IMG/VR virus record: IMGVR_UViG_3300032046_000001
Span: 248,421 to 312,420 of that record
Strand: one strand, 5' to 3'
DNA length: 64,000 bases
Notes under the pieces: model-generated
The model's database searches: none
Told to the model about the DNA's origin: nothing
What the model saw: only the letters and a program-made list of their open reading frames with translations
Translations under genes and position numbers: made by a program
In this document: positions 8,431-38,732 of the stretch, piece by piece
How the letters are laid out: every line of letters begins with the position of its first letter
Numbering within the stretch: position 1 is the stretch's first letter

Positions 8431-8464
8431 TTTGGAAGATCCGAGTAATTTCGGATCTTCCAAA
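8431..8464 (-). terminator. Perfect 14-bp hairpin, probable intrinsic terminator
   Basis: TTTGGAAGATCCGA-GTAATT-TCGGATCTTCCAAA just after the 8469..8666 stop. Confidence 0.7.
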
Positions 8465-8468: not shown

Positions 8469-8666
8469 TTAGAGAATACTATGACGAGCACAATATGCTC
8501 CTTTTATTATTTTGTCACTATTTTTGGGATTATGATACGATCTAAGTCCAACAGGATCATTATGTTCTGATGGATATGGTGCTTTAAACCAAGTATAAAT
8601 ACCTGTTTCTAATTCCCACAGACATTGTGGGCATGTTGGTAAAACAGAATCATCTTTTCTTTTCAT
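8469..8666 (-). CDS. Small hypothetical protein with CxxC
   Basis: ORF track, CPQC motif. Confidence 0.55.
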   Translation of the reverse strand: MKRKDDSVLPTCPQCLWELETGIYTWFKAPYPSEHNDPVGLRSYHNPKNSDKIIKGAYCARHSIL

Positions 8667-8890
8667 AAAATTGGATTTGCTGAAAATCTATTTTTGCCCT
8701 CGTTTACATAGCTGACTTTATACATTACGCCATTAATTGAAAATACAGTTCCTGTTGATGGTAATAATTGAGGCGGGACGTCAGCCTGTTTTGGTGCCAA
8801 AGATTCCTTAATTTCTTCAAGAGTCGCTGGTACTGTTACTACCGGAAATTCATTTCCATTTTGATCCTTAAAAATCACTTCATCAGACAT
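8663..8890 (-). CDS. Hypothetical protein
   Basis: ORF track with AGGAG SD. Confidence 0.65.
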   Translation of the reverse strand: MSDEVIFKDQNGNEFPVVTVPATLEEIKESLAPKQADVPPQLLPSTGTVFSINGVMYKVSYVNEGKNRFSANPIL

Positions 8891-8903: not shown

Positions 8904-9560
8904 TTAAATATTTTGATGATATTTATCATTTAAAATTTTTCGTATACTACTTATTGCGTGTTGTTCATATTTTTCTCTAAATAATTCAGTACGAAAAATA
9001 TGTTTTTTTGGATCTAAAAGAGTTAGTAAAAAATTTATTCTGGCATTTTTACTGAATGATAATCCATATTCCTTTTCAATATTATCATCATATTGATTGA
9101 AAGTTTCTTCATCAGAACCTAATATTGAAAAATCAATGTCATACATATAATTATATTCAATTATTGGTTTGGTTGATGTTCCATATTTTGTTTCTAAAAT
9201 TAAATCAGCAACTAAATCTGGATTTAATATCAAGTCTAACTCATATATTGATCTTACTGCTTCTATAGAACTTAATAATTCTGATTCTCCATTATAAGTA
9301 GTCATGATAAAATCATGCCAGAATATGGCGTACTCCATTTCTTCACGATTTGGAAGGGTTTGCTTGATACTATCTAATAGATCAATACTTCTCATAATAT
9401 GATCAATATTATGATAATGTCTTCTATGAGAAGTATATGCCGATATTAATTGATTTAAATATGCGGAGTGACTAAATCCACCACCATATAACGCAACACT
9501 TTGACATAATCTTGAAAATCTTTCTCTAAATGATGATATATCCATTATGACCACCACCAA
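8904..9560 (-). CDS. HD-superfamily predicted metal-dependent phosphohydrolase
   Basis: Y...RRHYHNIDHI, AIFWHD, DIDFSILG, FDQY...I..EY motifs. Confidence 0.85.
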   Translation of the reverse strand: MVVVIMDISSFRERFSRLCQSVALYGGGFSHSAYLNQLISAYTSHRRHYHNIDHIMRSIDLLDSIKQTLPNREEMEYAIFWHDFIMTTYNGESELLSSIEAVRSIYELDLILNPDLVADLILETKYGTSTKPIIEYNYMYDIDFSILGSDEETFNQYDDNIEKEYGLSFSKNARINFLLTLLDPKKHIFRTELFREKYEQHAISSIRKILNDKYHQNI

Positions 9561-10711
9561 TATCGCTGAATTGTCTCAGCTAATTTATGAAAACATTCTC
9601 GATCAAATTCAGTATCTGATACATTTGAATTATTGAATGTGATAATATCTCCGTGACCATCTTTTTTAATTTGATCTTGTATTCGTTTTCTAAGTTCTCC
9701 TGATGTTAATTGACTATTGATTCTTTCTTCGATTTGTTTATCAGTTAAAGATCTTGATCTTAATCTTTCATATTGTTCACTTGGGCTTGTCTCAACCAAG
9801 ATCACATTGTTATTAGATAGATAACCCAAATTAAAATCTAATATTTTATTACCGAATAAATAGGCACAATTCAGAAGAATAATACAATCTTTATTTTTCT
9901 GTAATTTCTCTCGATAGAGCATGAATAGAGCTTCATCTACTAATTTATATAGTTTAATCAATCTTTCAGGATTAGGGAAAACTTTCTCAGCCAGGATATG
10001 AGAATCTATCAAACACATACAATTATTATTAGAAAATATAATATCATCACCAAATTCGTCAACAATGTTTCGACGAATTTGTGTATAATATGGTTGAAAT
10101 CTCTGTGTATAAATCTCATGAACAAGATTATCGAAGTCTATATTAATCATCTTTAATGAACCAGCTTCAATTATCTTTTTTGTGACGAATGACTTACCAC
10201 AACCGATACCACCTACAACTCCAATAATTATTTGTCCAGAAATTTTTTTCTCAAGAGCTTGTTTGACATATAAAGGTACAAACTCATGAATGAATCCTTT
10301 GTGTTGTTCTAATACTTTAACAACAGAAGAACTCACATTTTCATACTTCTGTTCCGAAAATAAAAGTAAAGTCTCGATATTGGGAGCTTGTGATTTACCA
10401 ACTTTATATAGATTTGTTTCATACTGATAATCTTCTTGATTTCGGACACTTTTCACAATGATATCTATACCGTTTAAGATCGCATAATCAACAAGCAACC
10501 CATCAAATGCTGATACTTCAACATTAGGTATATGAGCAACTGATTTACGGATAAGTTCCAATCTCTCATATAAATTAAAAACATACTTCTTTGTTTCATT
10601 AATTCCAACGGCAACATGTACTTGTTCAAATAGTTTAGCTGCTCGTTCGATTGTATTTATATGACCAAAATGGATCGGGTCTCCACTCAGAGCAAACATA
10701 GCTTTTGACAT
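9545..10711 (-). CDS. coaD: Bifunctional phosphopantetheine adenylyltransferase / dephospho-CoA kinase (CoaD-CoaE fusion)
   Basis: N-term DPIHFGH (HxGH), FDGLLVDY, R..EDYQYE, SSSVVK; C-term IGVVGGIGCGKS P-loop plus CoaE-like segments. Confidence 0.88.
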   Translation of the reverse strand: MSKAMFALSGDPIHFGHINTIERAAKLFEQVHVAVGINETKKYVFNLYERLELIRKSVAHIPNVEVSAFDGLLVDYAILNGIDIIVKSVRNQEDYQYETNLYKVGKSQAPNIETLLLFSEQKYENVSSSVVKVLEQHKGFIHEFVPLYVKQALEKKISGQIIIGVVGGIGCGKSFVTKKIIEAGSLKMINIDFDNLVHEIYTQRFQPYYTQIRRNIVDEFGDDIIFSNNNCMCLIDSHILAEKVFPNPERLIKLYKLVDEALFMLYREKLQKNKDCIILLNCAYLFGNKILDFNLGYLSNNNVILVETSPSEQYERLRSRSLTDKQIEERINSQLTSGELRKRIQDQIKKDGHGDIITFNNSNVSDTEFDRECFHKLAETIQRYWWWS

Positions 10712-10721
10712 AATCGATCTC

Positions 10722-10934
10722 CTATGGTGTATCTACTTCTATTACTGTCTCATCAATACTTAATTCAACTATATAAAATATAATATTTCTATAATTAGAA
10801 TTTGGATCTTTTCTTTCATCAATAATCCATTCGTTTATCCTATTTTCATCTTCGGAAGAATAAACACAATCTCCTTGTGGTGAATTAATTCTACATTCAA
10901 ATTTGATATATGTTTTTTCCATTGTTTCTCTCAT
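10722..10934 (-). CDS. Hypothetical protein, paralog of 11352..11618
   Basis: FE.R..SP.G..VY......I..W....R shared. Confidence 0.6.
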   Translation of the reverse strand: MRETMEKTYIKFECRINSPQGDCVYSSEDENRINEWIIDERKDPNSNYRNIIFYIVELSIDETVIEVDTP

Positions 10935-11618: not shown

Positions 11619-11854
11619 TCATCATCTTGGATTGGTTTGGTATCATACCAATCCAATATAGCTCCACAGTATGGACACCAATAAATATATGTTTCACCAC
11701 CAGATGATGAATGTGGGTGTTCATGATGTTCAATTAATTCCATCTGATAATTACAAAATTTACAAATTTCATCAAAATTCATTTTTTCAAACCTGTTCCT
11801 ATATAGTATTTTTATGATATTCGTAGAACTTATTATTATAATCACGACATACAT
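11582..11854 (-). CDS. Zinc-ribbon protein (start probably internal)
   Basis: CKFC and WCPYCG pairs. Confidence 0.55.
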   Translation of the reverse strand: MYVVIIIISSTNIIKILYRNRFEKMNFDEICKFCNYQMELIEHHEHPHSSSGGETYIYWCPYCGAILDWYDTKPIQDDDWKEPIMTKDCI

Positions 11855-12791
11855 CTAAACAATTATTACGACATATAGAATCTTTATAAGTATCATGGTT
11901 TTTATACCAATTATATCTTTCTTCCATTATCTTATTTCTGATAATTGAGTGTTTCGATCCACAATGTAATATATTTCCGATTGGTTTTCCCTTTTCTCGC
12001 ATATAAATAATACATGGATAATGATATTCTCCGGCGATTGCTATATCATCTAATACCAATGGACATCGATTATAATCAGATAAAGAAAGACCTCGTACTG
12101 GAATATTATTTATGATATTGTTATACCGATATTTTAGTATTGGATGTTTATATAATATAGACGATTCAATATAAAATGTTGGATATTGTGTCCCATTTTG
12201 CGCTGCTGGTATAATGCGTATATCATCTACATGTAAGTCATGTGCTAATCTAATTATATCTCCCAATTCGGACATATTTTGTTCAGTCAATACCACACCA
12301 ACTGTTATATAAGATATCAATGATAAAAATTCAATTGTATCTATTACCTTTTTCCATTGACCTGTTTTTCCAGTCATTGTGTCACCTGTTGATGAACAAC
12401 ACGAATCCAGTGAAACAGAAAAATCATTCACTCCTGCGGCCATTAAATAAAAATATAATTCTTGATCATTAGACCCATTTGTTGAAATGGCAATATGTCC
12501 TATGTTATTTTGTCTCGCATATTTAATCATTTTTAACAGATCTTTATTTAAAGTTGGTTCTCCTCCTGAAAATCTGATATTCCTGATTTTATTATTGAAT
12601 ATATCAAGAATACATTTAATAGAATCTATCGTAAGATCACCACATAATTTATCTTCGAGTCCACGACAATATGGACATTTAAAATTACATCTATCGGTAA
12701 TTATTATTTCACATCGATTGATTATACCATCGGGAATTTTTTTTACTCTTTCTTCACACAATGTATAAAAACCTATTTCTTCAAGATTCAT
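11799..12791 (-). CDS. Radical SAM enzyme
   Basis: CNFKCPYC (CxxxCxxC), FSGGEPTL, ISTNG, SLD. Confidence 0.92.
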   Translation of the reverse strand: MNLEEIGFYTLCEERVKKIPDGIINRCEIIITDRCNFKCPYCRGLEDKLCGDLTIDSIKCILDIFNNKIRNIRFSGGEPTLNKDLLKMIKYARQNNIGHIAISTNGSNDQELYFYLMAAGVNDFSVSLDSCCSSTGDTMTGKTGQWKKVIDTIEFLSLISYITVGVVLTEQNMSELGDIIRLAHDLHVDDIRIIPAAQNGTQYPTFYIESSILYKHPILKYRYNNIINNIPVRGLSLSDYNRCPLVLDDIAIAGEYHYPCIIYMREKGKPIGNILHCGSKHSIIRNKIMEERYNWYKNHDTYKDSICRNNCLDVCRDYNNKFYEYHKNTI

Positions 12792-12844: not shown

Positions 12845-13171
12845 TTATTTTCTATAATTCCAATAACTTCTTTCATCTATTAATTCAGTACATTTTTCAA
12901 ACCATTCATCCACTGTATAAATTTCTGGTAAATTCAAACTAATTTTACCATAAGCACCATTATGAATTATATCAGAGGCATAAAACGTATAACCTCCAAT
13001 TTTAAAGGAATGTTTAAGATATATATTTTTTTCAAAATCATAACAAGCTCTACACTCCCGTTCTATATCACATAATAATGCCTCAGCAGATTCATACTCA
13101 GCGGGGAAAATAATTTCCCCGCCTTCATACTCACTACCATATTGATAAATAATAACGAGTCTCATCAACAA
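12845..13171 (-). CDS. Hypothetical protein
   Basis: ORF track. Confidence 0.55.
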   Translation of the reverse strand: MLMRLVIIYQYGSEYEGGEIIFPAEYESAEALLCDIERECRACYDFEKNIYLKHSFKIGGYTFYASDIIHNGAYGKISLNLPEIYTVDEWFEKCTELIDERSYWNYRK

Positions 13172-14670
13172 TCACCAGATTCGATTCGTTTCTTCATTAT
13201 TTCTTTCAATTCTTGAAGCTCTCTGCTAACCCAAACCGATTGTCTCTTTGGAAATTTAAGATCTTTCCATTGAGGTTTCAATAATGCCATTTCAGACTGA
13301 TGATATATCTTAATTTCATTAGCCATCAATGGCACTGTTAATCTCACATCATTCTGTAAAGTAGGTTGTAGCATGTTATGACGAATATCCCTTAGATCAG
13401 TATATCGTCTTCTTCCACTATTCGACCGCTCAACCATCTCTTGAGAATCAGATTTTGGTTGATCTTTTAAAGAAGTTGAATACTCTCCTTCAGAATCACG
13501 ATGTAATGATTTTTTACCAGGATCGGTCATTTTCTCTATACTACTACTAAGTTTGATGGTTGGATTACCATCAATATCAACTAATTTATAAACAACTCCT
13601 AACGGTACAGGAACAAGTTTAGTTCCAATACCATCAGCATCATTAGCTGCTTCTTTTTCCATCATCAACATTCTAGTATCTTCATCAATATCATTAGATG
13701 TAACGATCTTTACTGCTTTAAATCCGTTATCATCCAGAATCTTTCTTACAGTTTGAGAATCCCAAATTAAATCACCGGAATCGATACGAACTTTAAATCT
13801 CCGTAAACCGTGTTTATTTGCCGTTTTAAGGGCATCTCTTAGTCCTGTGAAGGTTCCATAGGTATCTAAAATAAATGCGGATTTCTCCCCAAATAACGAA
13901 GCCTGGGCATCAAAACTATAGAGTTGTCTCCTGTATGCCTCAACGGAACTATGGCTTGCTGTTCCTGATAATGGAATACCATATACTTGTCCCGCTAAAA
14001 CATTAGAACTTGATGTTGCCCCAGTGATATAGAATGCTCTTGATAATTCCAATGCCGCTTCTCTACCCATTCCTCTTCGCATATGAAAGTCTGCCCAAGG
14101 AACAGATGGATTAGCCAATGTCATTCTGGCACCATTGGTAGCACCAGCAATAACATATCCCATACATCCTAATATATAGGTTTCAATAAAATCACCGATT
14201 GCCAAAGGTGCTGTTATTTGAATTAAAGGAATATGGGGTTGAATAACAGTTCCTTCTGGAACCATTTCAACATATCCTTTAAACGATAACTCTCTTAAGT
14301 ATTCATATAATATCTCTGGAAAGTTCCATTGAGATTTGATAAAATCGATATCTCTTCCAGTCATTTCAAGCTGTTGGAGATATTCAATTACTTTTTCATT
14401 TCCCATCATTATACCGAAACTACCATTCTTTGGATTGTTTCGATAAAACATGTTAAACGTAGCGATGTCGTCTTGTTTACCAGAATGTAAATACATCGCC
14501 ATTTTCAATAGTTGATAAAAATCTGTTGACATGGCTGAGTTTAGAGGAGGTTTATCTGTAATATAAAATCTATTACCTTGAGGATCTTGAATTTCAACAT
14601 AACCATTCTTCATCACTTTCAATATTTTATTACCGCTATTGACAAGTGATTCTAAAAACTTATCATTCAT
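13165..14670 (-). CDS. pncB: Nicotinate phosphoribosyltransferase (internal start of the 13165..15171 ORF)
   Basis: TDFYQL, FHMRRG, SNVLAG..YGIP.SGTASHS, LDTY, VRIDSGDL, SNDIDE, GIGTKL, VYKLV, KxTDPGKK; SD GGAGGG ahead of ATG at 14670. Confidence 0.88.
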   Translation of the reverse strand: MNDKFLESLVNSGNKILKVMKNGYVEIQDPQGNRFYITDKPPLNSAMSTDFYQLLKMAMYLHSGKQDDIATFNMFYRNNPKNGSFGIMMGNEKVIEYLQQLEMTGRDIDFIKSQWNFPEILYEYLRELSFKGYVEMVPEGTVIQPHIPLIQITAPLAIGDFIETYILGCMGYVIAGATNGARMTLANPSVPWADFHMRRGMGREAALELSRAFYITGATSSSNVLAGQVYGIPLSGTASHSSVEAYRRQLYSFDAQASLFGEKSAFILDTYGTFTGLRDALKTANKHGLRRFKVRIDSGDLIWDSQTVRKILDDNGFKAVKIVTSNDIDEDTRMLMMEKEAANDADGIGTKLVPVPLGVVYKLVDIDGNPTIKLSSSIEKMTDPGKKSLHRDSEGEYSTSLKDQPKSDSQEMVERSNSGRRRYTDLRDIRHNMLQPTLQNDVRLTVPLMANEIKIYHQSEMALLKPQWKDLKFPKRQSVWVSRELQELKEIMKKRIESGDC

Positions 14671-15171
14671 TAAAACAATTCCCTCCAGTTTCGTTTGAAT
14701 AAGGTTGGTTGATCTACCATACCAGTATATTCGAATTTTCTTTTTCCCAAATTTAAAAGCCTCATATGGCTTTAATATATCAATTCTTGATCGAAATCGA
14801 GAACTTGTTTTATCAAGAACGATTTTTTCTCTAACTACATTATCGCTCTTGTAATAAATTTTTGTGTTTCGATCTAATCCTAATTTTACCAGATCTTTCG
14901 AAACAGCAATAATTTTGTGACGATTCTTGTTATGAATCCTGTCATTCCACGCACAAATATTTGGTGTAGAATCACATTGTTTTTTTGTGGCATTATATGC
15001 AGTTGCATCAACAATCTTACTATTTATAATCGGAATTTCCGATTGTTTAATACTCCAAATATAAAAAGATCTAAAATGATTTTTTGATTGAGTATCATAA
15101 ATTTTTGAAGTTGTAATTACTACCGGACACAATATAATTAAAATAAATAACATCATAAATGTCTTTTTCAA
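14671..15171 (-). CDS. Exported 3D-domain (MltA-like) protein, in frame with pncB and lacking its own stop
   Basis: Signal-like N-terminus; ATAYN...QCDSTP, IIAVSKDL, VLD...R..RIDI, FG.KKIRIYW. Confidence 0.7.
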
Positions 15172-17249: not shown

Positions 17250-18020
17250 TTACTCTATATTCTCATCCCATCGTACCAATGCTATTGGAGCTAATGCCCT
17301 CTTATGCTCAGTAGCTTCCATAATTTTTGAAATTCTCACTTCGTCTGGTGTTGTAGGTGTCTTACCACTGAGATATATTTTTGTGAGAACATCATCAAGA
17401 ACATCATAATTTCCGATATCATCCTCATCATAATGATTTGGTGTTAGATCAGCAGTTGGTCGCTTTGTCAGAATTTTTTCGGGAATTTGAATATAGTCGT
17501 GTTGAGTACAAAGTATATTATTATAATAATGTGCTAGACCATATACATCTCTTTTTAGTAATTCACCTAATAATTCGATATCTGATGCTCCATCGCCGAA
17601 TTTTGTAAAATATCCAGTCATAATTTCTGATAAATTACAAGTTCCAATAACTTTACTATTATGTTCATTGGCGTATGCATACAATAGACACATTCTTATC
17701 CTAGACATTATATTTTCTTTAGTTCCATTTTGCCATAAGATTCCGGTATTATAAAAGCTATCGTATATATTTCTAATGTTTATAATAGAGTATGATACAC
17801 CGAATTGGTGTACTAGATCAATACCATCCTTAAGATGTTCATTTTCCCAATATGGCATAAGCATAGCATGAATCTTGTCTTTTCCAACAGCCTGAACAGT
17901 CATTGCGAGACAAAGAGATGAGTCAATTCCACCAGATACTCCGAGGATAAAACCACTAGATGTTTCTAATTCTTCTCTGACAAAATCAACAATAATTTGA
18001 TTCACTTTTTCATAATTCAT
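17250..18020 (-). CDS. nadE: NH3-dependent NAD+ synthetase
   Basis: LGVSGGIDSS, NIMSRIRM..LY..AN, GTCNLSE..GYFTKFGDG, K.PTADL. Confidence 0.93.
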   Translation of the reverse strand: MNYEKVNQIIVDFVREELETSSGFILGVSGGIDSSLCLAMTVQAVGKDKIHAMLMPYWENEHLKDGIDLVHQFGVSYSIINIRNIYDSFYNTGILWQNGTKENIMSRIRMCLLYAYANEHNSKVIGTCNLSEIMTGYFTKFGDGASDIELLGELLKRDVYGLAHYYNNILCTQHDYIQIPEKILTKRPTADLTPNHYDEDDIGNYDVLDDVLTKIYLSGKTPTTPDEVRISKIMEATEHKRALAPIALVRWDENIE

Positions 18021-19723: not shown

Positions 19724-20035
19724 TTACCAAGCTCCCTCACTTTTATATCCAAGATCTTCTATTGAACTCAAATCAAAACCTCGTTCATCTTCGAACATCT
19801 GTTTTAACCTGATTCCCTTATTAATACCTTCTTGTCTCAAACATGCTGATAAATATAAAATATCTTCTCTTAAGTTTTTTAATCGTTGAATTCTGTCTTC
19901 GATTGCTCTATTTACACCTATTGTTTGTTTGTAAGATCTTTGGCTGTCTAAATTATCAATTTCAACTTTTATCAATCTTGCGATTTCAAATAACTCTTCA
20001 CCATCAAAAAATCGACCTATTATTTTATTATCCAT
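19724..20035 (-). CDS. Hypothetical protein
   Basis: ORF track, operon context. Confidence 0.6.
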   Translation of the reverse strand: MDNKIIGRFFDGEELFEIARLIKVEIDNLDSQRSYKQTIGVNRAIEDRIQRLKNLREDILYLSACLRQEGINKGIRLKQMFEDERGFDLSSIEDLGYKSEGAW

Positions 20036-20705
20036 TGAAATCTCGATTTATTAGATTAATCACACTATCTGTTCTAATAAAAAGAGCACCTGCTTTCATC
20101 ATCTCAAATAAGGCATTCTGTTTGCCTTCCTCAGTGATATGATATATACAATCATCAATTACCCATACTTTCTTTCCTCGTTTAAGAAGACCAAGTACAG
20201 CAGCTAAAACACAGTACTCAGTTGCAACACCATATACAAAGAAAGTATCAATATCGAGATATTTTAAACAAAAATCAATATTTTGATTACCACCTGGGTT
20301 CGTTTCATCCCAAAAAACATTATAGCTTTGTTTTTCAAAAGTAATTTGACATGCTGCATCTAAAAGAATTTTTAAAAGTTCTTCACTATACATATCTTCT
20401 GAATCAATATGTATTGAATACTCTGGTGTTGTTGATTCTTCAATTTTACTACAACCATTTGTATCATCTTCACAATGCATTGGAAATGGTCCACCATTTA
20501 CATCAAGTTCTATTTCCGCTTCTTTATGTGCGGTATCTCCAAAATGTCTATCACCACAACCAAGTATTTTAATATTATTTTCATAACCATATTTTGTTAA
20601 TTTAGAAATATTTGGAATAATTTTTTCAGAATCTTTTATATATAATTTACCATTCTTGGTCATAAAATCAACTAACGTATCTACATCAAAAAAAGCGCAT
20701 TTCAT
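20028..20705 (-). CDS. pncA: Nicotinamidase / isochorismatase-family hydrolase
   Basis: DVDTLVDF..GKL, D.H, FPMHC, FEKQSYNVF, YGVATEYCV (catalytic Cys). Confidence 0.9.
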   Translation of the reverse strand: MKCAFFDVDTLVDFMTKNGKLYIKDSEKIIPNISKLTKYGYENNIKILGCGDRHFGDTAHKEAEIELDVNGGPFPMHCEDDTNGCSKIEESTTPEYSIHIDSEDMYSEELLKILLDAACQITFEKQSYNVFWDETNPGGNQNIDFCLKYLDIDTFFVYGVATEYCVLAAVLGLLKRGKKVWVIDDCIYHITEEGKQNALFEMMKAGALFIRTDSVINLINRDFNG

Positions 20706-21200: not shown

Positions 21201-22382
21201 TTAGGCGATCATTTCTTCTGTTATATCATAGTCCTTTTCAGTGTCATCTCTTTCAACTTCAAATTGAAAATCAACCATTAAAGACTCAATAACAGATTTT
21301 AATCCTCTCGCTCCAATCCCCTTTCTGTCAGCGATTTCGGCAATTCTTCTTATAGCATTGTCAGTAAAATTTAAATTAATATTATCAATTTCTAATAATC
21401 TCTGATATTGTTTGATTATTGAATCAACTGGGTCTGTTAAAATACGAGCTAATTCATCAATGGATAATCTATTAAGTACCGACACTATTGGAATTCGGCC
21501 AACTAATTCAGGTATTAAACCATACTGAATAAGATCATCTTGTTCTAAATAATTTAATAAATCGATATCGCGTTCAGCTTTAGACATCTTTGTATTAAAA
21601 CCAATATTATTTTTACATAGACGAGCTGAAACAATATCAGAAAGACCATTAAAGGCACCACCAAATACAAATAATATATTTGATGTATCCATTAACAATC
21701 GATCTCCATGTGGGTGTTTTCTTGCACCTGTTGGTTGAATATTCATTACTGAACCTTCAATCATTTTTAACAAACCAAACTGAACACCTTCACCTGATAC
21801 GTCTCGTGTTATCGATGTACTTGCTGAACTCTTCTTGGCTTTTTTATCAATCTCATCAATAAAAATAATTCCCTTAGATGCTCGTTCAACATCAAAATCA
21901 CAAGCGAGTAATAACATTTGAATCATTGATTCAATATTATCACCCACATAACCTTCTTCGGTTAATGTTGTTGCATCAGCAATAATAAATGGAACTCTCA
22001 ATATTTTTGATAATGTCTGTGCAAAAAGTGTCTTTCCAGATCCAGATGGACCTATTAAAAGAATATTACTTTTTTGGACATTAAGGTTACATAGAATCTT
22101 TAACATATGATTATAGACACCAACAGAAATTATTTTTTTAGTTTTTTCTTGACCAATAATATATTGATCTAAAATAATTTTAATCTCTTTTGGTGTCATG
22201 ATTTTTTGTTTTTTAGGCTTTGAATTTTTAATTTGATCAACTTTAAGATCCGAATTAATATTTTCAGCCGTTAATGCCAATCTTGCTGTATCAATACAAG
22301 AATCACAGATACAAATATTCGGATCGCTCGATTCAATTATTAATTTATAATCTGTACTATGACAGAAGCTACATTCTCTCAT
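21201..22382 (-). CDS. clpX: ATP-dependent Clp protease ATP-binding subunit ClpX
   Basis: CSFC..ICDSC zinc finger, GPSGSGKT, GYVG, FIDEIDK, RDVSGEGVQ, IGF loop, GARGL. Confidence 0.96.
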   Translation of the reverse strand: MRECSFCHSTDYKLIIESSDPNICICDSCIDTARLALTAENINSDLKVDQIKNSKPKKQKIMTPKEIKIILDQYIIGQEKTKKIISVGVYNHMLKILCNLNVQKSNILLIGPSGSGKTLFAQTLSKILRVPFIIADATTLTEEGYVGDNIESMIQMLLLACDFDVERASKGIIFIDEIDKKAKKSSASTSITRDVSGEGVQFGLLKMIEGSVMNIQPTGARKHPHGDRLLMDTSNILFVFGGAFNGLSDIVSARLCKNNIGFNTKMSKAERDIDLLNYLEQDDLIQYGLIPELVGRIPIVSVLNRLSIDELARILTDPVDSIIKQYQRLLEIDNINLNFTDNAIRRIAEIADRKGIGARGLKSVIESLMVDFQFEVERDDTEKDYDITEEMIA

Positions 22383-23064: not shown

Positions 23065-23640
23065 TTAATATATTTTCATCATACTCTTAATTATTTCACT
23101 GTCATTCTTACTGGAAACAATAGTTGAAATATCATTTGTTCCAAATTTTTTAATTCGAATTGCCCATTCATCGATATCTGAAAATATGTCTAAATATTTA
23201 TGAGTTTCATTAACTCTATCTTCAAGCGTTTGGTTTGGAATCTTATTTATATTTAAATAATCTATTAATAGACTGATTAAAAATTCAAAATTAAAATTTT
23301 GATTTTTTGATCTAACAATCAATTCATGATAAAAACCATCAGCATAAATCGACATTCCTCTATACATCTTAAATTCGTCATCGATATGAAAATTGAAAAA
23401 ACAATTGTGATAATTGTCTTTATACTTGTAACTGAAATTAATTTTCAAATAAAAATTTTTTAAATTTATTTTTTCAATTAGATCATCTGGAATAACAACA
23501 ACACTTAATATTTGTCTTAACTCATTAAGATCTACTTTAGTTTCACTTAAAAATGAAACCATTGCTATTGATCCATAATTGTGATGATTATCAATAAATA
23601 ATATAGACTGTTTAAATTGCTCAATTCCAAAATATGTCAT
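23065..23640 (-). CDS. Hypothetical protein coupled to rpoB
   Basis: ATG overlaps the rpoB stop. Confidence 0.65.
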   Translation of the reverse strand: MTYFGIEQFKQSILFIDNHHNYGSIAMVSFLSETKVDLNELRQILSVVVIPDDLIEKINLKNFYLKINFSYKYKDNYHNCFFNFHIDDEFKMYRGMSIYADGFYHELIVRSKNQNFNFEFLISLLIDYLNINKIPNQTLEDRVNETHKYLDIFSDIDEWAIRIKKFGTNDISTIVSSKNDSEIIKSMMKIY

Positions 23641-26600
23641 TAATCTCCTTTATCGATTCCGATAACTGTTAGATATGAATTTAATAATCGTACAGATTCA
23701 CTTATCATATCATTCTCTTTATAAATTTCATTCCGTAATTTATTTCCAGAATCGATTTGATCAAACATCCATTTATTCTTAGCCTCAATTGAATCAGACT
23801 TGGTTGTCATTGATTCATTCAAATTATGAACAGAATCATGAGCAATCATACAACTAACTTCCATTTCACCAAGTCTTTGACCACCATTATTTCTTTTACC
23901 ACCAGTTGGTTGTAGTGTTTTCTTAGTATATGTTCCAATTCCTCTCGCTGATAATTTATCTTCAGCTATATGAATCATTCGAAAGAAATACAAATACCCT
24001 ACAGCTAAATCATTTACAAGCGTATCACCGGCAACTGGATCATATATTGGATATTTAAATCGAGTGTTTGTATATTTCAACGCTTTTTTACATTGCTTTA
24101 TATTTATCGATTCAAATGGTGGTTGAATCAAAGAAAGATCATCAATAAATTTTTCATCAATCTTGACCATTTTTAATTGATTTTTAAACTGGTTAAAATA
24201 CCAGTTATCTTTTGTATTATCAATAATTTTAATATATTTTAATAAATATTTTTTAATGGTTGATTGTGATAAGATACCCTCCTTCAATTCTTGATATTTG
24301 AGTTTTTCTTCTTCAGATTCAAGTGAATCAATCATTTGTAATAATTCATTATCTTTTTTAATCAAACTTCGCATGTTATTTTTCAGATCCATTAATGACA
24401 TTGCCAAATGAAGTTCAAATAACTGTCCGATGTTCATTCGACTTATTATTCCTAATGGATTGATGATAATATCTAATGGTCTACCATCAGGTAATTTCGG
24501 CATATCTTCAGTTTTGACAATCTTTGAAATAACACCTTTATTGCCGTGTCTATTTCCTATTTTATCGCCAACTTCGATTTTCCGAATATAATATCCTGTT
24601 AGATGAACAAAAATACCATCAAACTTCTCACCTTTAATTTTATACTTACCCTCAGATAAAAAGTTGTTTAAATTATTTTTAGCGAATTTATTATATTCAC
24701 TTTTGGGTAAATATTTTCCCAAGATTTTACTTATTTTTTTCTCTTTTATTTTTTGATCAATAATTTTTTGTTCAATCCAATCTTGAAATTCTTGAGGTAC
24801 ATTCTTAGTTGGATAATCATTGACATAAATATTACTTTCGAGAATACACATCTTTTTGGGAGATATTAAATTTTCATCTTCTTCAAATAACACACTGAAG
24901 TCATTGTTTTGTTGTACTTTTCGTAACATTGCATATGGTTGACCAGTATTAATCCACTCCCCAGGTTCAGGTAATGGTTTATATTCCATAGTCCTCGCAC
25001 GTTCACCATATTCGTCATACTCTTCAGGTTGTGGCTTACATGTATTCAAATTTGAAAGTATTTTATTTGATGGGATAAAGAATGAGAGATCTCGATAATG
25101 AATAGAAGATAAGATTCGTTCATCGACTAATCTTTCGGATATCACTATACCATCTTCATAATTATAACCATAGTATATACCAATACCTGTTAATAAATTT
25201 CTACCAATACTAATATTACGATCCTTTGTAAATAATGATTCAACTAAAATATCACCTTGACGAAATCGTTCTCCCTCTTTGAAGTTCGTTTCCATCATGT
25301 CCATATTATCAGTATAAATTTTCTTGTAACCAGTTTGAATTAATTCGATTTCATCATCATCATACTTGACAATAATAAATCCCTCATCATCGTCATGATA
25401 TAATACAATTCCATCTTTTTTGGCCATCTTAAGAAAGTTTGTATATTGCGTATATAAACTCTCACATCCACTTTGAATCAATGGTTTTTCTGGTTTTCTT
25501 AAAAGGATAGCTTGTCTCATTTGAGACGAGGCCATTTGTAATCTTGTTTGGTCGTCATGCTCTAAAAAAGGCACCATAGCAACTGGAATTGATATGGGAC
25601 TTTTAGATTGAATCTCGCTTGTGAATTTCATATTATGATCTAATTTTGAAGTTGGTAGAATATTTCCGACAATTCCACAATTATCTCTATCTGGTGTATC
25701 AACAACACAAATTCGTCCGAACATTGAATCATTGATATCACGAATATTTTCTGGAACACTCTTTCTTTCGAAACCATTCGGACCCAATAATGATATTCTT
25801 GATAATTCAGTCAATGAATCAATAGGATTTATTGAAAAATCAAATTGAATAATTTCCGATACATTACAGTTCTGTAATATTTCGGATGAATTGATATTAA
25901 ATTTTGGTTTTGAATTTTTAGTTATAATACATAGATTGAATATTGCTTTTGCCACATAACTAAAAATTAAATATTCAAAACATCTAATTCGTTTATTTTC
26001 ATAATTTAAAAAATCAAAAGGTCCATTTTGTATAGCATCAATAAAATCTTCTATAACAGAACCAGTTTTAAGAAATCTGGCTGTTATAACATCAATTTTT
26101 GGTATAAGATCTAATCCATATAATATTTCTTCACCTTTAAGTTTGGCATTATACTTAGTAAAAGTTTCACCCAACATCTTGGTATATTCGTCTTTGGTCT
26201 TATTCATATTATAATATAAATAGACTTGTTTAATTAATCGATTATAAAATGTGTCTTCTAAACCTTCAACGTTTTCCTGACTTAAATTAAATCGTGAATT
26301 TAATACTTCTGGACCATAATAGGCCAATAATAATAATGCGAAAGGTAGTTTTTTATTAAGAAAGGTAAATATGATCGTTTTCTTTTCATAAAGTATTATA
26401 GTCTGGACATTTGATTTAAACTTAATTATAAAACTATCATCTGATTTTTTATTCAATTTTGTTATTATTGGAAAATCGGTAATTTGAAAATGAGGAATCT
26501 TTCTTTTACCATTGATAAAAATATAATTATCGTCAATGAGTTCTGGAATGTTAATACTTAGATCAACTTTTGCCTCATCTTTTGATAAGATAATATTTAA

Positions 26601-26801
26601 ATTTTTCTTAAACGTTTTCTGTAACTCTTCCCCTTGAGATCGACAATCGTTTATTTCAAACTTCTCAATTTTATATCCAATTTCTTTGACTGGTTGTAAT
26701 GCCTCAAATATTTGTCCTTCAAGTTTTTCATATTCACGTTTTCTTAAAGTAAAAATATTATCAACATCATCAATTTTTAGATTCGGATTTTCTATAATCA
26801 T
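23640..26801 (-). CDS. rpoB: DNA-directed RNA polymerase subunit beta (phage-encoded)
   Basis: GRICVVDTPD..NCG, PFLEHDD..R..M.S.QMRQA, GYNYEDG, GDKIGNRHGNKGV, PLGIISRMNIGQL, GGQRLGEME. Confidence 0.96.
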   Translation of the reverse strand: MIIENPNLKIDDVDNIFTLRKREYEKLEGQIFEALQPVKEIGYKIEKFEINDCRSQGEELQKTFKKNLNIILSKDEAKVDLSINIPELIDDNYIFINGKRKIPHFQITDFPIITKLNKKSDDSFIIKFKSNVQTIILYEKKTIIFTFLNKKLPFALLLLAYYGPEVLNSRFNLSQENVEGLEDTFYNRLIKQVYLYYNMNKTKDEYTKMLGETFTKYNAKLKGEEILYGLDLIPKIDVITARFLKTGSVIEDFIDAIQNGPFDFLNYENKRIRCFEYLIFSYVAKAIFNLCIITKNSKPKFNINSSEILQNCNVSEIIQFDFSINPIDSLTELSRISLLGPNGFERKSVPENIRDINDSMFGRICVVDTPDRDNCGIVGNILPTSKLDHNMKFTSEIQSKSPISIPVAMVPFLEHDDQTRLQMASSQMRQAILLRKPEKPLIQSGCESLYTQYTNFLKMAKKDGIVLYHDDDEGFIIVKYDDDEIELIQTGYKKIYTDNMDMMETNFKEGERFRQGDILVESLFTKDRNISIGRNLLTGIGIYYGYNYEDGIVISERLVDERILSSIHYRDLSFFIPSNKILSNLNTCKPQPEEYDEYGERARTMEYKPLPEPGEWINTGQPYAMLRKVQQNNDFSVLFEEDENLISPKKMCILESNIYVNDYPTKNVPQEFQDWIEQKIIDQKIKEKKISKILGKYLPKSEYNKFAKNNLNNFLSEGKYKIKGEKFDGIFVHLTGYYIRKIEVGDKIGNRHGNKGVISKIVKTEDMPKLPDGRPLDIIINPLGIISRMNIGQLFELHLAMSLMDLKNNMRSLIKKDNELLQMIDSLESEEEKLKYQELKEGILSQSTIKKYLLKYIKIIDNTKDNWYFNQFKNQLKMVKIDEKFIDDLSLIQPPFESINIKQCKKALKYTNTRFKYPIYDPVAGDTLVNDLAVGYLYFFRMIHIAEDKLSARGIGTYTKKTLQPTGGKRNNGGQRLGEMEVSCMIAHDSVHNLNESMTTKSDSIEAKNKWMFDQIDSGNKLRNEIYKENDMISESVRLLNSYLTVIGIDKGD

Positions 26802-31991: not shown

Positions 31992-32111
31992 TATCTAAAA
32001 TTGGTGGGTAATTAAAGTTAAATAAAATATATTTTTAATTTGTTATTTAAATAAATTTTTTATTCCCATAAAAAAATAAAAAAATAAATTAGGATAATTA
32101 TAGGATAAGGG

Positions 32112-32137
32112 AAGGGATGGAATTTCTTCCATCCCTT
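32112..32137 (-). terminator. Hairpin after the Ubl gene
   Basis: AAGGGATGGAA-TTTC-TTCCATCCCTT. Confidence 0.6.
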
Positions 32138-32186
32138 TTTCCACTTATGTACTACACCCGGTATATCATATTATAATATTGGGTTA

Positions 32187-32741
32187 TTAACCCTTGCGAT
32201 CGGCAGGCTTCGTGAACTCCAGGGTCAAATCAGTCGATGTCAAAACGTAGTCGTATGCTACCTCGGTCGTACCGTTGACCAAAGCTTTGGAACCGGCAGC
32301 GATATTGAACGCTCCACTGAGCAAATTGAATACTTCCTGGACTGCATGTCCTACGGTGTCTTCGATCTCCTGTTTGTTGGTACCGCAGGTAACGACAATC
32401 TTGGTGTTGACACAGCCGTCATTGGCATTGGTGACAGTAAACGTACCGGAAACCGCAGCAAGGGCAACCCTGGTAAAATGGGCAATGAGAAGTTCCACCA
32501 AAATAGCCTTGGGTTGTTTTCCCAGACCGGACATACCATTTTCCTCGGCCAGCGTGAGCAGATCGGTAACAGACATTGCATTCAATTGTTCCCGGCTAAG
32601 AACCTCGGATTTCTCGACCATATCGTTCTCAATTACTTTGGCAATCATCTCGACGGTCTGTCCGTCCAATCCAGTGATCCCACGTCCAGCAGCGATTTGA
32701 AGAAGTTCGGCCTTTGACTTACCATTCAGTGCTTGATTCAT
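32187..32741 (-). CDS. Ubiquitin-like (beta-grasp) protein with two N-terminal Rho-N/HeH-like helical repeats
   Basis: Repeats SKAELLQIAAGRGITGL / SVTDLLTLAEENGMSGL; C-terminal domain ...ALVNG.......VL.......LEFTKPADRKG ending in a free Gly like Prok_Ub proteins. Confidence 0.75.
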   Translation of the reverse strand: MNQALNGKSKAELLQIAAGRGITGLDGQTVEMIAKVIENDMVEKSEVLSREQLNAMSVTDLLTLAEENGMSGLGKQPKAILVELLIAHFTRVALAAVSGTFTVTNANDGCVNTKIVVTCGTNKQEIEDTVGHAVQEVFNLLSGAFNIAAGSKALVNGTTEVAYDYVLTSTDLTLEFTKPADRKG

Positions 32742-32914
32742 AAAAATAATTCTCCTTTTGGAAATAGATTAGGTTCACTAAGTGAATCCTTTGAGATAAA
32801 ATACAGCGGCGACATTAATTATTTTTTTCTATCTCCTAAATAATTATAGCACCTCCCTTTGGATTTATCCATGAAGTTAGAGAGTTAAGACAACTCTCTC
32901 TTGATGGATTCTAT

Positions 32915-33181
32915 TTACTGAGTAAATTCCTGAAGCTTTTTCACTTTTCCCTCAATCCAATCAATACGATTCTTGGCATCCTGTTGACCAGCCTTAGCAG
33001 CCGAAATCTGATGATTTAGTTTCTGCACTTTTCGTGTCAAGGATTCAATTCGTTGTTCCTCCATTTGCGATGCCTGTTGAAGTTTCTTCTCAGCAACTGC
33101 AAACATTTTCAATGCGTTACCAAGAACTGTGGGAGCAACATTAATACCAAAATGAGATAATAAAATATAAAACCAGTCCAT
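32915..33181 (-). CDS. Small coiled-coil protein
   Basis: GGAGG SD, heptad pattern. Confidence 0.65.
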   Translation of the reverse strand: MDWFYILLSHFGINVAPTVLGNALKMFAVAEKKLQQASQMEEQRIESLTRKVQKLNHQISAAKAGQQDAKNRIDWIEGKVKKLQEFTQ

Positions 33182-33223
33182 TACAGACCTCCTTTACAAT
33201 ATTAAAAAGTACGAATTGTACCT

Positions 33224-33244
33224 TTCACATATTTATTATATATA
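33224..33244 (-). promoter_or_regulatory. Conserved intergenic motif variant, putative phage promoter (copy 4)
   Basis: TTCACATATTTATTATATATA; first 10 nt identical to consensus. Confidence 0.45.
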
Positions 33245-33297
33245 GATATAATCGTATATACAAGAATTTAAATATTTGGGTGCTTTGTATAATTAAA

Positions 33298-33999
33298 CTA
33301 TACTGGGAACTGTTTGGCTAAAACTTCACCTGTGAGAATATCGAAATCATTCTCACAGGTGGTATCGAGTTGACCAAGGATACAGATCTTGTAAAATCGA
33401 CACAACACAATCCATGCCGCTCCCATGTTTGCGAATAACAATTGTGGTTCTGCTTGATGCAATGCCTCACATCCGAGACGCTGAGGGTGTTGTCCATCAC
33501 CAACGGATATCTCTTCATGGTATCTGGTAATTGACGCAGTGTAGTTTTGTCCTGCAATCCGAACGTTTGTCAAAACATCGCCGGTGTAGAATCCATTACC
33601 CCCAGAAATTAAAACTACATTTTGCAGGGTAGCAACTTTTTCTGCAATCAACGCTCTGGTATCATGATTGTCAACACACACTAATACAATATCATCTTCT
33701 TGGATGATACTACTAATGTTGCTCTCACTGAGATATTCAGGAACCGAATGGATAGTTAAATCATACTTCTGCATGAGTTCGGTGGCTTTAATCTCGGCTT
33801 TATTACCGAAGTTATAAAAATCCTGTCTCTCCCGATTACGCTGCTCGAAGCTATCTCCGTCTACGATAGTTACCTCGAAGGTGTCAGCCTCTTCGCCTTC
33901 TGCTGGTTGCGGATGATAATAATTGAGGAATTGGCACAACGGATCAAGTAATTTAGTACCAATACCACCAGCACCTATAACTTTAATCGACCGATTCAT
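33298..33999 (-). CDS. E1-like ubiquitin-activating ThiF-family enzyme
   Basis: VIGAGGIGT, DGDSFEQRNRERQ, K(A), VCVDNH, GGNG, GCE....PQLLFAN (candidate catalytic Cys). Confidence 0.88.
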   Translation of the reverse strand: MNRSIKVIGAGGIGTKLLDPLCQFLNYYHPQPAEGEEADTFEVTIVDGDSFEQRNRERQDFYNFGNKAEIKATELMQKYDLTIHSVPEYLSESNISSIIQEDDIVLVCVDNHDTRALIAEKVATLQNVVLISGGNGFYTGDVLTNVRIAGQNYTASITRYHEEISVGDGQHPQRLGCEALHQAEPQLLFANMGAAWIVLCRFYKICILGQLDTTCENDFDILTGEVLAKQFPV

Positions 34000-35191: not shown

Positions 35192-35192
35192 A

Positions 35193-37607: not shown

Positions 37608-37636
37608 GATAACATCCTTTCCAAGTAATATAAAAT

Positions 37637-38620: not shown

Positions 38621-38675
38621 TTTAACTCCAAATAAAATAAAAACATTTAATTTTTTTTAAAAAAATTAAAACATC

Positions 38676-38711
38676 AAATAAGGAGAGAGAATAAGTTCTC
38701 TCTCCTTATTT
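38676..38711 (-). terminator. Perfect 16-bp hairpin terminator after porin operon
   Basis: AAATAAGGAGAGAGAA-TAAG-TTCTCTCTCCTTATTT. Confidence 0.75.
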
Positions 38712-38732
38712 AGCCACCATCATCGGAACATC

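What the first reader, a model, noticed from the sequence alone, without database searches (positions are those of the whole stretch)
8904..10711. CoaD-CoaE fusion plus overlapping HD hydrolase: phage control of CoA synthesis
Seen: one 388-aa ORF with CoaD then CoaE motifs, overlapping an HD-family gene. Established: bacteria usually encode these steps separately, while eukaryotic CoA synthase fuses them. Inference: an auxiliary CoA module. Alternatives are that the HxGH domain supplies the missing NaMN adenylyltransferase, or makes dephospho-CoA for non-canonical RNA capping by the phage RNAP.
Basis: partly seen in the sequence, partly recalled or inferred. Interest (0 to 1): 0.6.

Follow-up and report, generated by a model that had tools for sequence, protein, structure and literature searches.

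The report
Phage CoA-synthesis genes with HD partner
A 312-kb soil and sediment phage carries a fused gene for the last two steps of coenzyme A synthesis, followed by an uncharacterised HD-type hydrolase that cells also keep fused or adjacent to the same enzyme. With two earlier pathway genes elsewhere in the genome, it is a viral cofactor-supply module of a broadly known kind that also points to an unstudied enzyme partnership.

Summary
ORF 9545-10711(-) is a 388-aa CoaD-CoaE fusion. Both halves pass NCBIfam equivalog cut-offs (coaD 152.7 bits against 103.3; coaE 77.2 against 65.55), and the catalytic motifs are intact.

The next gene, 8904-9545(-), most likely starts at an ATG that overlaps the stop by 1 nt (TAATG). 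It matches no Pfam or NCBIfam family. Its H..HD..D motifs and a confident model (pLDDT 92.7) place it in the HD superfamily, closest to class-I phosphodiesterases (Z about 15).

- **The fusion is not a phage invention.** Proteins with the same two-domain layout (about 40-45% identical) occur in DPANN archaea, Patescibacteria, Bacteroidota, Gammaproteobacteria and Spirochaetales. The phage clade (8 sequences) sits on a long branch with no cellular sister, so the transfer was not recent.
- **The HD-like protein is a recurrent partner of PPAT.** I found CoaD-CoaE-HD and CoaD-HD fusions, an HD-archaeal-PPAT fusion in reverse order, and adjacency in either gene order.
- **The phage also encodes CoaC- and CoaB-like genes** near 141-143 kb. 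That gives four of the five CoA steps. No pantothenate kinase was found.
- **A separate NadM-type NMNAT exists** (67.9-68.4 kb), so the "missing NaMNAT" idea is not needed. An intact CoaE domain argues against dephospho-CoA accumulating for RNA capping.

Verdict: a real auxiliary CoA module inside a cofactor (NAD + CoA) island. The HD partner's substrate is unknown.

The parts
9545..10711 (-). Gene for the 388-aa bifunctional CoaD-CoaE protein (phosphopantetheine adenylyltransferase + dephospho-CoA kinase), stop codon included
   Evidence: ORF. TIGR01510 152.7 bits and TIGR00152 77.2 bits, both above cut-off. Pfam CTP_transf_like + CoaE.
10241..10711 (-). CoaD (PPAT) domain, residues 1-157. 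Motifs: S9-G-D11-P12-I-H14-F-G16-H17 (HxGH type), K41, R90, D94, E98, S127-S128
   Evidence: Gapless alignment with S. aureus PPAT 3f3m/4nah (1.1e-34). These residues are invariant across 30 fused homologues.
9548..10240 (-). CoaE (DPCK) domain, residues 158-388. P-loop G167-x-x-G170-x-G172-K173-S, then D192-F-D194 aligned to the E. coli CoaE D-A-D motif, R320
   Evidence: Alignments with A. aeolicus DPCK 2if2 (6.8e-10) and E. coli CoaE 1vhl. Invariant columns.
10718..10723 (-). AGGAGA ribosome-binding site, 6 nt upstream of the ATG at 10711; it overlaps the stop codon of the upstream 70-aa ORF
   Evidence: Sequence read.
8904..9545 (-). Gene for the 213-aa HD-superfamily, phosphodiesterase-like hydrolase. 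ATG at 9545 overlaps the CoaDE stop by 1 nt (TAATG); an alternative TTG lies at 9560
   Evidence: Sequence. phrog_19425. Motifs. AF2 model pLDDT 92.7. Fold matches: PDE catalytic domains Z 14-15.6, 2pq7 Z 12.9, YedJ Z 10.7, YpgQ Z 10.2. Homologous to the C-terminal domain of CoaD-CoaE-HD fusions.
8431..8464 (-). Terminator-like hairpin (14-bp stem, T-rich tail). It probably ends the transcription unit that holds CoaDE, the HD-like gene and two small ORFs (8663-8890, 8469-8666)
   Evidence: Consensus scan: 5 terminator-like sites against 1.3 expected. This is a pattern match only.
13165..15171 (-). Context: nicotinate phosphoribosyltransferase (PncB) with an unexplained N-terminal extension of about 200 aa
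   Evidence: TIGR01513 324 bits. The extension has no Pfam family. Relatives' products are the same size.
17250..18020 (-). Context: NAD+ synthase (NadE)
   Evidence: TIGR00552 200.5 bits.
20028..20705 (-). Context: nicotinamidase-like (isochorismatase family, PncA-like) protein
   Evidence: NF008623 49.5 bits, below cut-off. The syntenic gene in L001 carries Pfam Isochorismatase.

Best explanation
The locus is a phage-borne coenzyme A biosynthesis module.

The 388-aa protein is a bifunctional enzyme. Its bacterial-type PPAT half adenylylates 4'-phosphopantetheine to dephospho-CoA. Its P-loop kinase half phosphorylates the 3'-OH to give CoA. The phage lineage acquired the gene already fused, from a widespread prokaryotic CoaD-CoaE family, and has kept it for a long time.

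The phage also has CoaB-like and CoaC-like genes at about 141-143 kb of the same 312-kb genome. Together these let it take 4'-phosphopantothenate, made by the host's pantothenate kinase, through to CoA. It can do so independently of host CoaBC, CoaD and CoaE.

The module sits in a conserved cofactor island with NAD salvage genes (PncA-like, PncB, NadE). The likely purpose is to hold up or raise the CoA pool, alongside NAD+, during infection (inferred).

The translationally coupled downstream protein is a metal-dependent, phosphodiesterase-like HD hydrolase. It works with the PPAT step; the link is shown by recurrent fusion and adjacency. Its substrate is not known. My working guess is that it hydrolyses a phosphoester that feeds or tidies the PPAT reaction. 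One option is release of 4'-phosphopantetheine from a conjugate. Another is removal of an adenylylated by-product, by analogy with the NadD-YqeK pair.
For: Shown:
- Both domains pass curated equivalog cut-offs. They align with solved PPATs and DPCKs with catalytic motifs conserved.
- The fused family is the only coaD/coaE homologue in a Nanoarchaeia genome and a Paceibacterota genome. In one organism it sits beside ADP-forming acetyl-CoA synthetase and pyruvate formate-lyase. Both points argue that the family really makes CoA.
- The phage genome has a CoaC-like gene (Pfam Flavoprotein 87 bits; coaC_strep matched over its full length, 119 bits). It also has a CoaB-like gene (Pfam DFP 83 bits; NF005231 matched over its full length, 96.9 bits).
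- Synteny PncA-NadE-Band7-PncB-(rSAM)-CoaDE-HD is kept in relatives.

HD partner link:
- The C-terminal domain of the 580-600-aa CoaD-CoaE-HD proteins is homologous to the phage protein (2e-22).
- CoaD-HD fusions of about 370 aa exist, and so does an HD-archaeal-type-PPAT fusion in the reverse order.
- The HD-like ORF lies directly downstream of CoaDE, separate or fused, in 7 of 17 cellular loci. In Sporocytophaga it lies directly upstream.
- Atlas clusters with CTP_transf_like plus this fold occur in Minisyncoccota and in ciliates.

Other:
- Viral coaD, coaE and nadE have been listed among abundant AMGs in snow viromes (PMC11097641).
Against: - There is no biochemical or expression evidence. 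No RNA run holds the locus.
- The CoaB- and CoaC-like genes score below NCBIfam equivalog cut-offs.
- In Tenacibaculum, Pseudomonas serbica and a Kangiellaceae MAG the fusion is an extra copy beside canonical coaD and coaE. The family could therefore have a specialised or different role in some lineages.
- The phage clade sits on a long branch (1.66 substitutions per site), which allows functional drift.
- Most HD-like family members stand alone (120 of the 150 best are 240 aa or shorter). In Bacteroidota 6 of 17 lie next to a WYL-WCX regulator, so the family's role may not be confined to CoA.
- The host is unknown, so a benefit cannot be tied to host physiology.
Confidence: 0.68

Rival explanations
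1. Counter-defence reading. The NAD + CoA island exists mainly to rebuild cofactors that host abortive-infection systems destroy, as known phage NAD+ reconstitution pathways do. In this view the CoA genes answer a CoA-targeting or ATP/cofactor-depleting immunity. This overlaps with the best explanation on enzymology and differs on purpose.
For: - CoaDE-HD is conserved in the same block as PncA-like, PncB and NadE.
- A separate NMNAT completes NAD synthesis.
- Phage NAD+ reconstitution against NAD-depleting defences is established (my own knowledge, not checked here).
- Standalone HD-like genes often sit next to WYL-WCX regulators. To my knowledge such regulators commonly control defence or stress loci.
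Against: - I know of no CoA-depleting defence system, and none turned up in the literature searches.
- Nothing in the locus is specific to defence.
Confidence: 0.15
2. The HxGH domain supplies the NaMN/NMN adenylyltransferase step for the neighbouring NAD salvage genes.
For: - The gene lies in the same block as PncB and NadE.
- Weak cross-hits to NMNAT profiles (phrog_3462 3.1e-9; TIGR00482 22.7 bits).
Against: - It scores as coaD at 152.7 bits against nadD at 22.7 bits (cut-off 112.45).
- It aligns without gaps to solved PPATs.
- The genome has its own NadM-type NMNAT-like gene of 175 aa at G000:C1:67896-68423, with an HxGH motif and full-length matches to archaeal NMNAT models.
Confidence: 0.04
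3. The module makes dephospho-CoA as a non-canonical initiating nucleotide so that the phage multisubunit RNA polymerase caps phage transcripts. The HD enzyme could act as a cap-related hydrolase.
For: - The phage encodes RNAP beta/beta'-like subunits 13-20 kb away.
- dpCoA capping by bacterial RNAP is known (my own knowledge).
- An HD hydrolase of unknown substrate is coupled to the gene.
Against: - The kinase half has an intact P-loop and catalytic Asp and is covalently fused. That favours passing dephospho-CoA on to CoA.
- The same fusion is the sole CoA route in small-genome archaea and bacteria.
- There is no evidence about phage transcripts.
Confidence: 0.04
4. The fused family, with its HD partner, makes or turns over a different adenylylated small molecule, such as a signalling nucleotide or a modified cofactor. 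In lineages that already have coaD and coaE it is not a CoA enzyme at all.
For: - It is an extra paralogue beside canonical coaD and coaE in three free-living bacteria, one of them on a 1-Mb plasmid.
- Variable third domains occur: HD-like or CYTH.
- The phage clade sits on a long branch.
- Standalone HD-like genes neighbour WYL regulators.
Against: - Equivalog-level scores and conserved substrate-side motifs.
- It is the sole copy in DPANN and CPR genomes.
- The phage also carries CoaB and CoaC, which only make sense for the pantetheine route.
Confidence: 0.08

Closest known systems
Bacterial CoaD (PPAT, TIGR01510) and CoaE (DPCK, TIGR00152)
   Same: Both halves score above the curated cut-offs. 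The HxGH, SSS, P-loop and Asp motifs are conserved. The CoaD half aligns without gaps to solved PPATs.
   Different: The two are fused in one polypeptide. The phage clade has a short insertion in the kinase half and a conserved Trp-rich C-terminus. Canonical bacteria encode the two genes separately.
Prokaryotic CoaD-CoaE fusion family (DPANN archaea, Patescibacteria, Sporocytophaga, Tenacibaculum, Spirochaetales and others)
   Same: Same domain order and length (about 375-390 aa), 37-45% identity over the full length, and the same HD-like partner fused or adjacent in many members.
   Different: The phage clade is a separate long branch. It is encoded by a virus, within an NAD/CoA cofactor island.
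Eukaryotic CoA synthase (COASY)
   Same: Same PPAT-then-DPCK order and the same two reactions.
   Different: It is an independent fusion. The phage PPAT half is bacterial-type, and COASY (2f6r) matches only the kinase half weakly (7.9e-4).
Viral coaD / coaE auxiliary metabolic genes
   Same: Stand-alone coaD occurs in Lak megaphages, Microcystis phage MaAM05, Myxococcus phage Mx1 and Caulobacter/Brevundimonas phages. coaD, coaE and nadE are reported as abundant AMGs in snow viromes (PMC11097641).
   Different: No record in the phage collection covers more than 40% of the fused protein. I found no report of a fused CoaDE plus CoaB and CoaC plus an HD partner in one phage.
NadD-YqeK pair (an HxGH adenylyltransferase with an adjacent or fused HD hydrolase; YqeK is reported as an Ap4A hydrolase - my own recollection, not checked here)
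   Same: Same logic: an HxGH adenylyltransferase of cofactor synthesis paired or fused with a small HD-superfamily hydrolase.
   Different: It is a different HD family; the NCBIfam scan returned no family at all for the phage protein. The transferase and the pathway also differ.
Class I cyclic-nucleotide phosphodiesterase catalytic domain and small bacterial HD hydrolases (2pq7, YedJ 3gw7, YpgQ 5dqv)
   Same: Best structural matches: Z 14-15.6 over about 205 residues for the PDEs, and Z 10-13 for the small HD proteins. The H..HD..D metal-site pattern is present. The Y-H-x-x-x-H motif (Y-H-N in the phage protein) resembles the PDE YHNxxH motif as I recall it.
   Different: There is no sequence-level family match. 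The protein is about 100 residues shorter than PDE catalytic domains. The substrate is unknown.
AcpH (acyl carrier protein phosphodiesterase, PF04336)
   Same: Similar size. It releases 4'-phosphopantetheine, which is the PPAT substrate, and that is why I considered it. To my recollection it is described as an HD-type phosphodiesterase.
   Different: Profile-profile comparison finds no relationship (probability 0.2%). Genomes carrying the fusion also have a bona fide AcpH.

Membership tests
Bacterial PPAT / CoaD (TIGR01510) | Full-length profile match above the curated equivalog cut-off | tested here: met
   152.7 bits against 103.3, positions 2-154 of 155.
Bacterial PPAT / CoaD (TIGR01510) | HxGH-type nucleotidyltransferase motif, the conserved Lys, the R..D..(Y)E motif and the SSS motif | tested here: met
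   H14-F-G16-H17, K41, R90, D94, E98 and S127-S128 are invariant in 30 homologues. They align with GSFDPITYGH, R..DFEYE and ISSSIVK of S. aureus PPAT.
Bacterial PPAT / CoaD (TIGR01510) | Adenylylates 4'-phosphopantetheine | not testable with these tools
   Needs an enzyme assay or complementation.
Dephospho-CoA kinase / CoaE (TIGR00152) | Profile match above the curated cut-off | tested here: met
   77.2 bits against 65.55. Pfam CoaE 63.2 bits against 27.
Dephospho-CoA kinase / CoaE (TIGR00152) | P-loop GxxGxGK(S/T) and the Asp of the D-x-D motif | tested here: met
   GGIGCGKS aligns to GGIGSGKS of E. coli CoaE, and IDFD aligns to IDAD. G167, K173 and D194 are invariant.
Eukaryotic CoA synthase (COASY) | PPAT half of the eukaryotic/archaeal type, fused to DPCK | tested here: not met
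   The PPAT half is bacterial-type (TIGR01510). COASY 2f6r matches only the kinase half at 7.9e-4.
NadD / NMNAT | Profile match above cut-off | tested here: not met
   TIGR00482 22.7 bits against 112.45; other NMNAT models 19-22 bits.
HD superfamily (PF01966) | H..HD..D metal-binding residues on an all-helical HD fold | tested here: met
   H45/H49, H77-D78 and D136/D138 are conserved. The model has pLDDT 92.7. Fold matches to PDEs Z 14-15.6 and to HD proteins 2pq7, 3gw7 and 5dqv Z 10-13.
HD superfamily (PF01966) | Pfam HD profile match | tested here: not met
   The phage protein has no Pfam family at E 0.01 or better. Only weak HD hits appear in two fused homologues (19.5 and 17.8 bits, below cut-off 22).
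Class I cyclic-nucleotide phosphodiesterase | PDEase_I sequence family and full catalytic-domain architecture | tested here: inconclusive
   It is the best structural neighbour (Z about 15, 205 residues aligned). There is no sequence-family match, and the chain is about 100 residues shorter. High Z values are common for helical folds.
AcpH (PF04336) | Homology to the ACP phosphodiesterase family | tested here: not met
   hhalign probability 0.2% between a 118-sequence HD-like alignment and three AcpH sequences.
YqeK-type NadD-associated HD hydrolase | Match to the NCBIfam YqeK model | tested here: not met
   The NCBIfam scan returned no family for the phage protein.
PPAT-associated HD-like family (defined here; COG4339-like by my recollection) | Full-length homology with the C-terminal domain of CoaD-CoaE-HD and CoaD-HD fusion proteins | tested here: met
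   BLASTP 2e-22 and 3e-13. The profile search finds 16,688 representatives, among them 7 triple and 5 double fusions in the best 150.

The most novel reading that the evidence does not exclude
The uncharacterised HD/phosphodiesterase-like family is a missing accessory enzyme of the PPAT step. It would release 4'-phosphopantetheine from a phosphodiester-linked carrier, such as holo-carrier proteins or another conjugate. Organisms and viruses that hold only the late CoA genes could then salvage CoA. In the phage, it would strip host phosphopantetheinylated proteins and channel the prosthetic group into CoA.
Probability: 0.12. Interest if true: 0.75.

Novelty: new variant of a known kind. Interest (0 to 1): 0.5.

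Why it matters
Phage genes for cofactor supply are a known category; NAD is the best-studied case. CoA genes in viruses have so far only been listed in surveys.

- **A near-complete viral CoA route.** One complete 312-kb phage genome carries CoaB, CoaC and a fused CoaD-CoaE next to an NAD salvage set. That makes a viral CoA route directly testable.
- **A lead on an unstudied enzyme family.** The second gene belongs to a very large HD-type hydrolase family, with more than 16,000 cluster representatives. It has fused repeatedly with both bacterial- and archaeal-type PPAT, and fold clusters suggest the same architecture in ciliates. Such recurrent fusion is strong comparative evidence for an unrecognised activity tied to the PPAT step of CoA metabolism.
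- **Relevance to reduced-genome organisms.** That activity could matter for how DPANN archaea and CPR bacteria obtain CoA, since the two such genomes checked here carry the fusion as their only coaD/coaE homologue.

Tried and rejected
- **Close phage relatives.** megablast of the locus against phage records found no match. A degenerate-pattern scan of viral contigs found no relative.
- **Solved homologue of the HD-like protein.** A sequence search gave only a chance-level hit (3zpj, E 0.031). Foldseek against the PDB gave weak E-values of about 0.02 to PDEs. The wide VIA search was clearer.
- **AcpH hypothesis.** Rejected as a homology claim.
- **Complex prediction of CoaDE with the HD-like protein.** No verdict (score 0.00). 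This counts neither for nor against binding.
- **Pantothenate kinase.** Types I and III were not found in the phage genome. The type II search is uninformative because its control failed.
- **ACP and AcpS.** Not found in the phage genome.
- **The 237-aa ORF between the CoaC-like and CoaB-like genes.** It has no family and does not look like a kinase.
- **Literature.** Searches for COG4339, PPAT plus HD domain, coaD/coaE in DPANN, and CoA biosynthesis in jumbo phages returned nothing relevant.
- **Host.** Not identified. The RNAP subunit is at most about 28% identical to anything in the phage collection. One close relative's contig is binned as Patescibacteria, which may be a binning artefact.
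- **Not done.** Read laying was not used.
- **Use of the large profile search.** It was used once, because family scans and the word search left the HD-like protein open.
Full report
**Setting.** The window is the last 64 kb of a complete 312,420-bp virus record with direct terminal repeats. GC content is about 28%, and nearly all genes lie on the minus strand. The genome encodes a T4-type Gp23 major capsid protein and RNA polymerase beta/beta'-like subunits. It also encodes ClpX and topoisomerase II. Near-identical DNA occurs in sediment and soil metagenomes from several studies, and no RNA run holds it. No cultured phage is close, and the host is unknown.

**Observation.** The ORF at 9545-10711(-) encodes 388 aa.
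- Residues 4-156 match TIGR01510 (coaD) end to end at 152.7 bits (cut-off 103.3).
- Residues 162-350 match TIGR00152 (dephospho-CoA kinase) at 77.2 bits (cut-off 65.55). Pfam agrees.
- The CoaD half aligns without gaps to S. aureus PPAT (1.1e-34). The kinase half aligns to A. aeolicus and E. coli DPCK.
- In an alignment of 30 fused homologues, the expected catalytic residues are invariant and present in the phage protein. These are the HxGH histidine H17, K41, R90, D94, E98, S127-S128, the P-loop residues G167 and K173, and D194.
- An AGGAGA site precedes the start codon.
- The downstream gene most likely starts at the ATG that shares one base with the TAA stop (TAATG), giving 213 aa.
- Relatives show a 1-nt overlap or a 6-nt gap.
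- A strong terminator-like hairpin follows two further small ORFs.

**The fusion is inherited, not invented.** The word search found 159 proteins, and the 120 listed nearly all share the same two-domain layout.
- Seven are 68-80% identical and lie on short metagenomic contigs. The two whose contigs I fetched show phage-like synteny.
- The rest are 37-45% identical and come from Woese-, Pace-, Micr- and Nanoarchaeota, Patescibacteria, Sporocytophaga, Spirochaetales and Phycisphaerae.
- A scan of species genomes added Tenacibaculum, Pseudomonas serbica (a 1-Mb plasmid), Kangiellaceae, Aminicenantes and others.
- In a maximum-likelihood tree the eight phage-type sequences form one clade (SH-aLRT 100). 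The clade sits on a long stem (1.66 substitutions per site) and has no supported cellular sister. The acquisition is therefore old.
- In a Nanoarchaeia genome and a Paceibacterota genome the fusion is the only coaD and coaE homologue. In three free-living bacteria it is an extra copy beside canonical genes.
- In one anaerobe it follows an ADP-forming acetyl-CoA synthetase and pyruvate formate-lyase.
- No record in the phage collection covers more than 40% of the protein. Stand-alone coaD does occur in Lak megaphages, Microcystis phage MaAM05, Myxococcus phage Mx1 and others.

**The second gene.** It has no Pfam or NCBIfam family and matches only PHROG 19425, 'phosphohydrolase'.
- The alignment shows R42-x-Y44-H45-x3-H49, H77-D78 and D136-x-D138.
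- The AlphaFold model is confident (pLDDT 92.7, pTM 0.90).
- The best structural neighbours are class-I phosphodiesterase catalytic domains (Z 14-15.6 over about 205 residues). Small bacterial HD hydrolases follow: 2pq7 at Z 12.9, YedJ at 10.7 and YpgQ at 10.2. Helical folds inflate Z, so this shows the HD/PDE fold, not a function.
- A profile search of 1.84 billion representatives returned 16,688 hits, 4,574 of them below 1e-30. Most are stand-alone proteins of about 205-220 aa.

**The link between the two genes.** This is the main new result.
- The 580-600-aa relatives of the fusion carry a third domain homologous to the phage's second protein (31% identity, 2e-22).
- Among the 150 best family representatives, 7 are CoaD-CoaE-HD and 5 are bacterial-type CoaD-HD.
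- One more has the HD domain placed before an archaeal-type PPAT (NF001985), and one is a fragment of a triple fusion.
- In 7 of 17 cellular loci with the fusion, the HD-like ORF lies directly downstream, separate or fused.
- In Sporocytophaga the HD gene lies directly upstream instead.
- Atlas structure clusters add CTP_transf_like + HD-like proteins in Minisyncoccota and in ciliates.
- The independent joins involve two different PPAT types, both gene orders and at least two domains of life. They tie this hydrolase to the PPAT step, not to the kinase step or to chance neighbourhood.
- One relative carries a CYTH domain in the third position instead.
- The substrate remains open. AcpH is unrelated, the NCBIfam scan returned no family for the phage protein, so no YqeK match, and the complex prediction gave no verdict.
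- Stand-alone members in Bacteroidota occur in about 17 of 201 genomes. In 6 of those 17 they lie next to a WYL-WCX regulator, so the family may have roles beyond CoA.

**The rest of the pathway.**
- Searching the whole phage genome found a CoaC-like flavoprotein at G000:C1:142461-143195. It scores Pfam Flavoprotein 87 bits and matches coaC_strep over its full length.
- A CoaB-like ligase lies at 140921-141673. It scores Pfam DFP 83 bits and matches NF005231 over its full length.
- Pantothenate kinase types I and III, ACP and AcpS were not found.
- The phage therefore encodes four of the five CoA steps and presumably relies on host pantothenate kinase.

**The NAD context.**
- Upstream in the window lie PncB, a Band_7 protein, NadE and a PncA-like gene. 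The order is conserved in relatives.
- A NadM-type NMNAT-like gene lies at 67896-68423.
- The second alternative (dephospho-CoA for capping) is unsupported, because the kinase half looks active and is covalently attached.

**Verdict.** This is a real phage auxiliary module for CoA synthesis within a cofactor island. The fused enzyme is a new viral member of a known prokaryotic family. Viral coaD and coaE have been noted before in surveys (PMC11097641). What lies beyond the known is the near-complete pathway in one phage and the conserved HD/PDE-like partner of PPAT. I found no literature on that partnership.

Noticed in passing
G000:C1:140921-143195 (L125:6922-9196, minus strand), outside the window: CoaB-like (250 aa) and CoaC-like (244 aa) genes, separated by a 237-aa ORF of unknown function that contains two similar short repeats. 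With CoaDE this gives the phage four of the five CoA steps.
   Followed up: partly
window 13165-15171 (-): The nicotinate phosphoribosyltransferase carries an N-terminal extension of about 200 aa that starts with a hydrophobic, signal-like segment. The extension has no Pfam family. Relatives have products of similar size (664 and 694 aa).
   Followed up: partly
G000:C1:67896-68423 (L005:1150-1677, minus strand): A 175-aa NadM/archaeal-type NMN adenylyltransferase-like gene, far from the NAD salvage cluster. All its scores are below curated cut-offs, but the matches run the full length and the HxGH motif is intact.
   Followed up: partly
window 11799-12791 (-) and 37637-38620 (-): Two radical SAM proteins. 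The first (MoaA/SPASM-like N-terminal half) sits between PncB and CoaDE. It is present in relative L001 but absent in L003.
   Followed up: no
window 32001-40000: A stretch with higher GC (0.35-0.40 against 0.24-0.31 elsewhere). It holds large ORFs (33983-35263, 35193-37607, 39031-40026) that have no PHROG match.
   Followed up: no
window 21201-22382 (-), 23640-26801 (-), 27884-30667 (-): A full-length ClpX homologue (484 bits) lies next to two RNA polymerase beta/beta'-like subunit genes. The genome also has a T4-type Gp23 capsid protein.
   Followed up: no
L099, L105, L107-L110 (Bacteroidota genomes): Stand-alone HD-like genes of this family lie next to a WYL-WCX domain regulator in 6 of 17 Bacteroidota loci. 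This hints at ligand-controlled or stress- or defence-linked expression.
   Followed up: partly
P0108 (metagenomic protein, 553 aa); P0138 (336 aa): Other architectures in these families: CoaD-CoaE-CYTH, where a triphosphate-tunnel domain takes the place of the HD-like domain, and DUF7079-HD-like.
   Followed up: no
L089:14987-15146 and L089:6318-8146 (Sporocytophaga myxococcoides): The HD-like and CoaDE pair lies about 7 kb from a NAMPT-type gene. This is a second case of CoA and NAD salvage genes lying near each other.
   Followed up: no
window 9548-9562 (C-terminus of the fusion): The phage-clade proteins end in a conserved Trp-rich tail (YWWW), which cellular homologues lack. Its role is unknown.
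   Followed up: no
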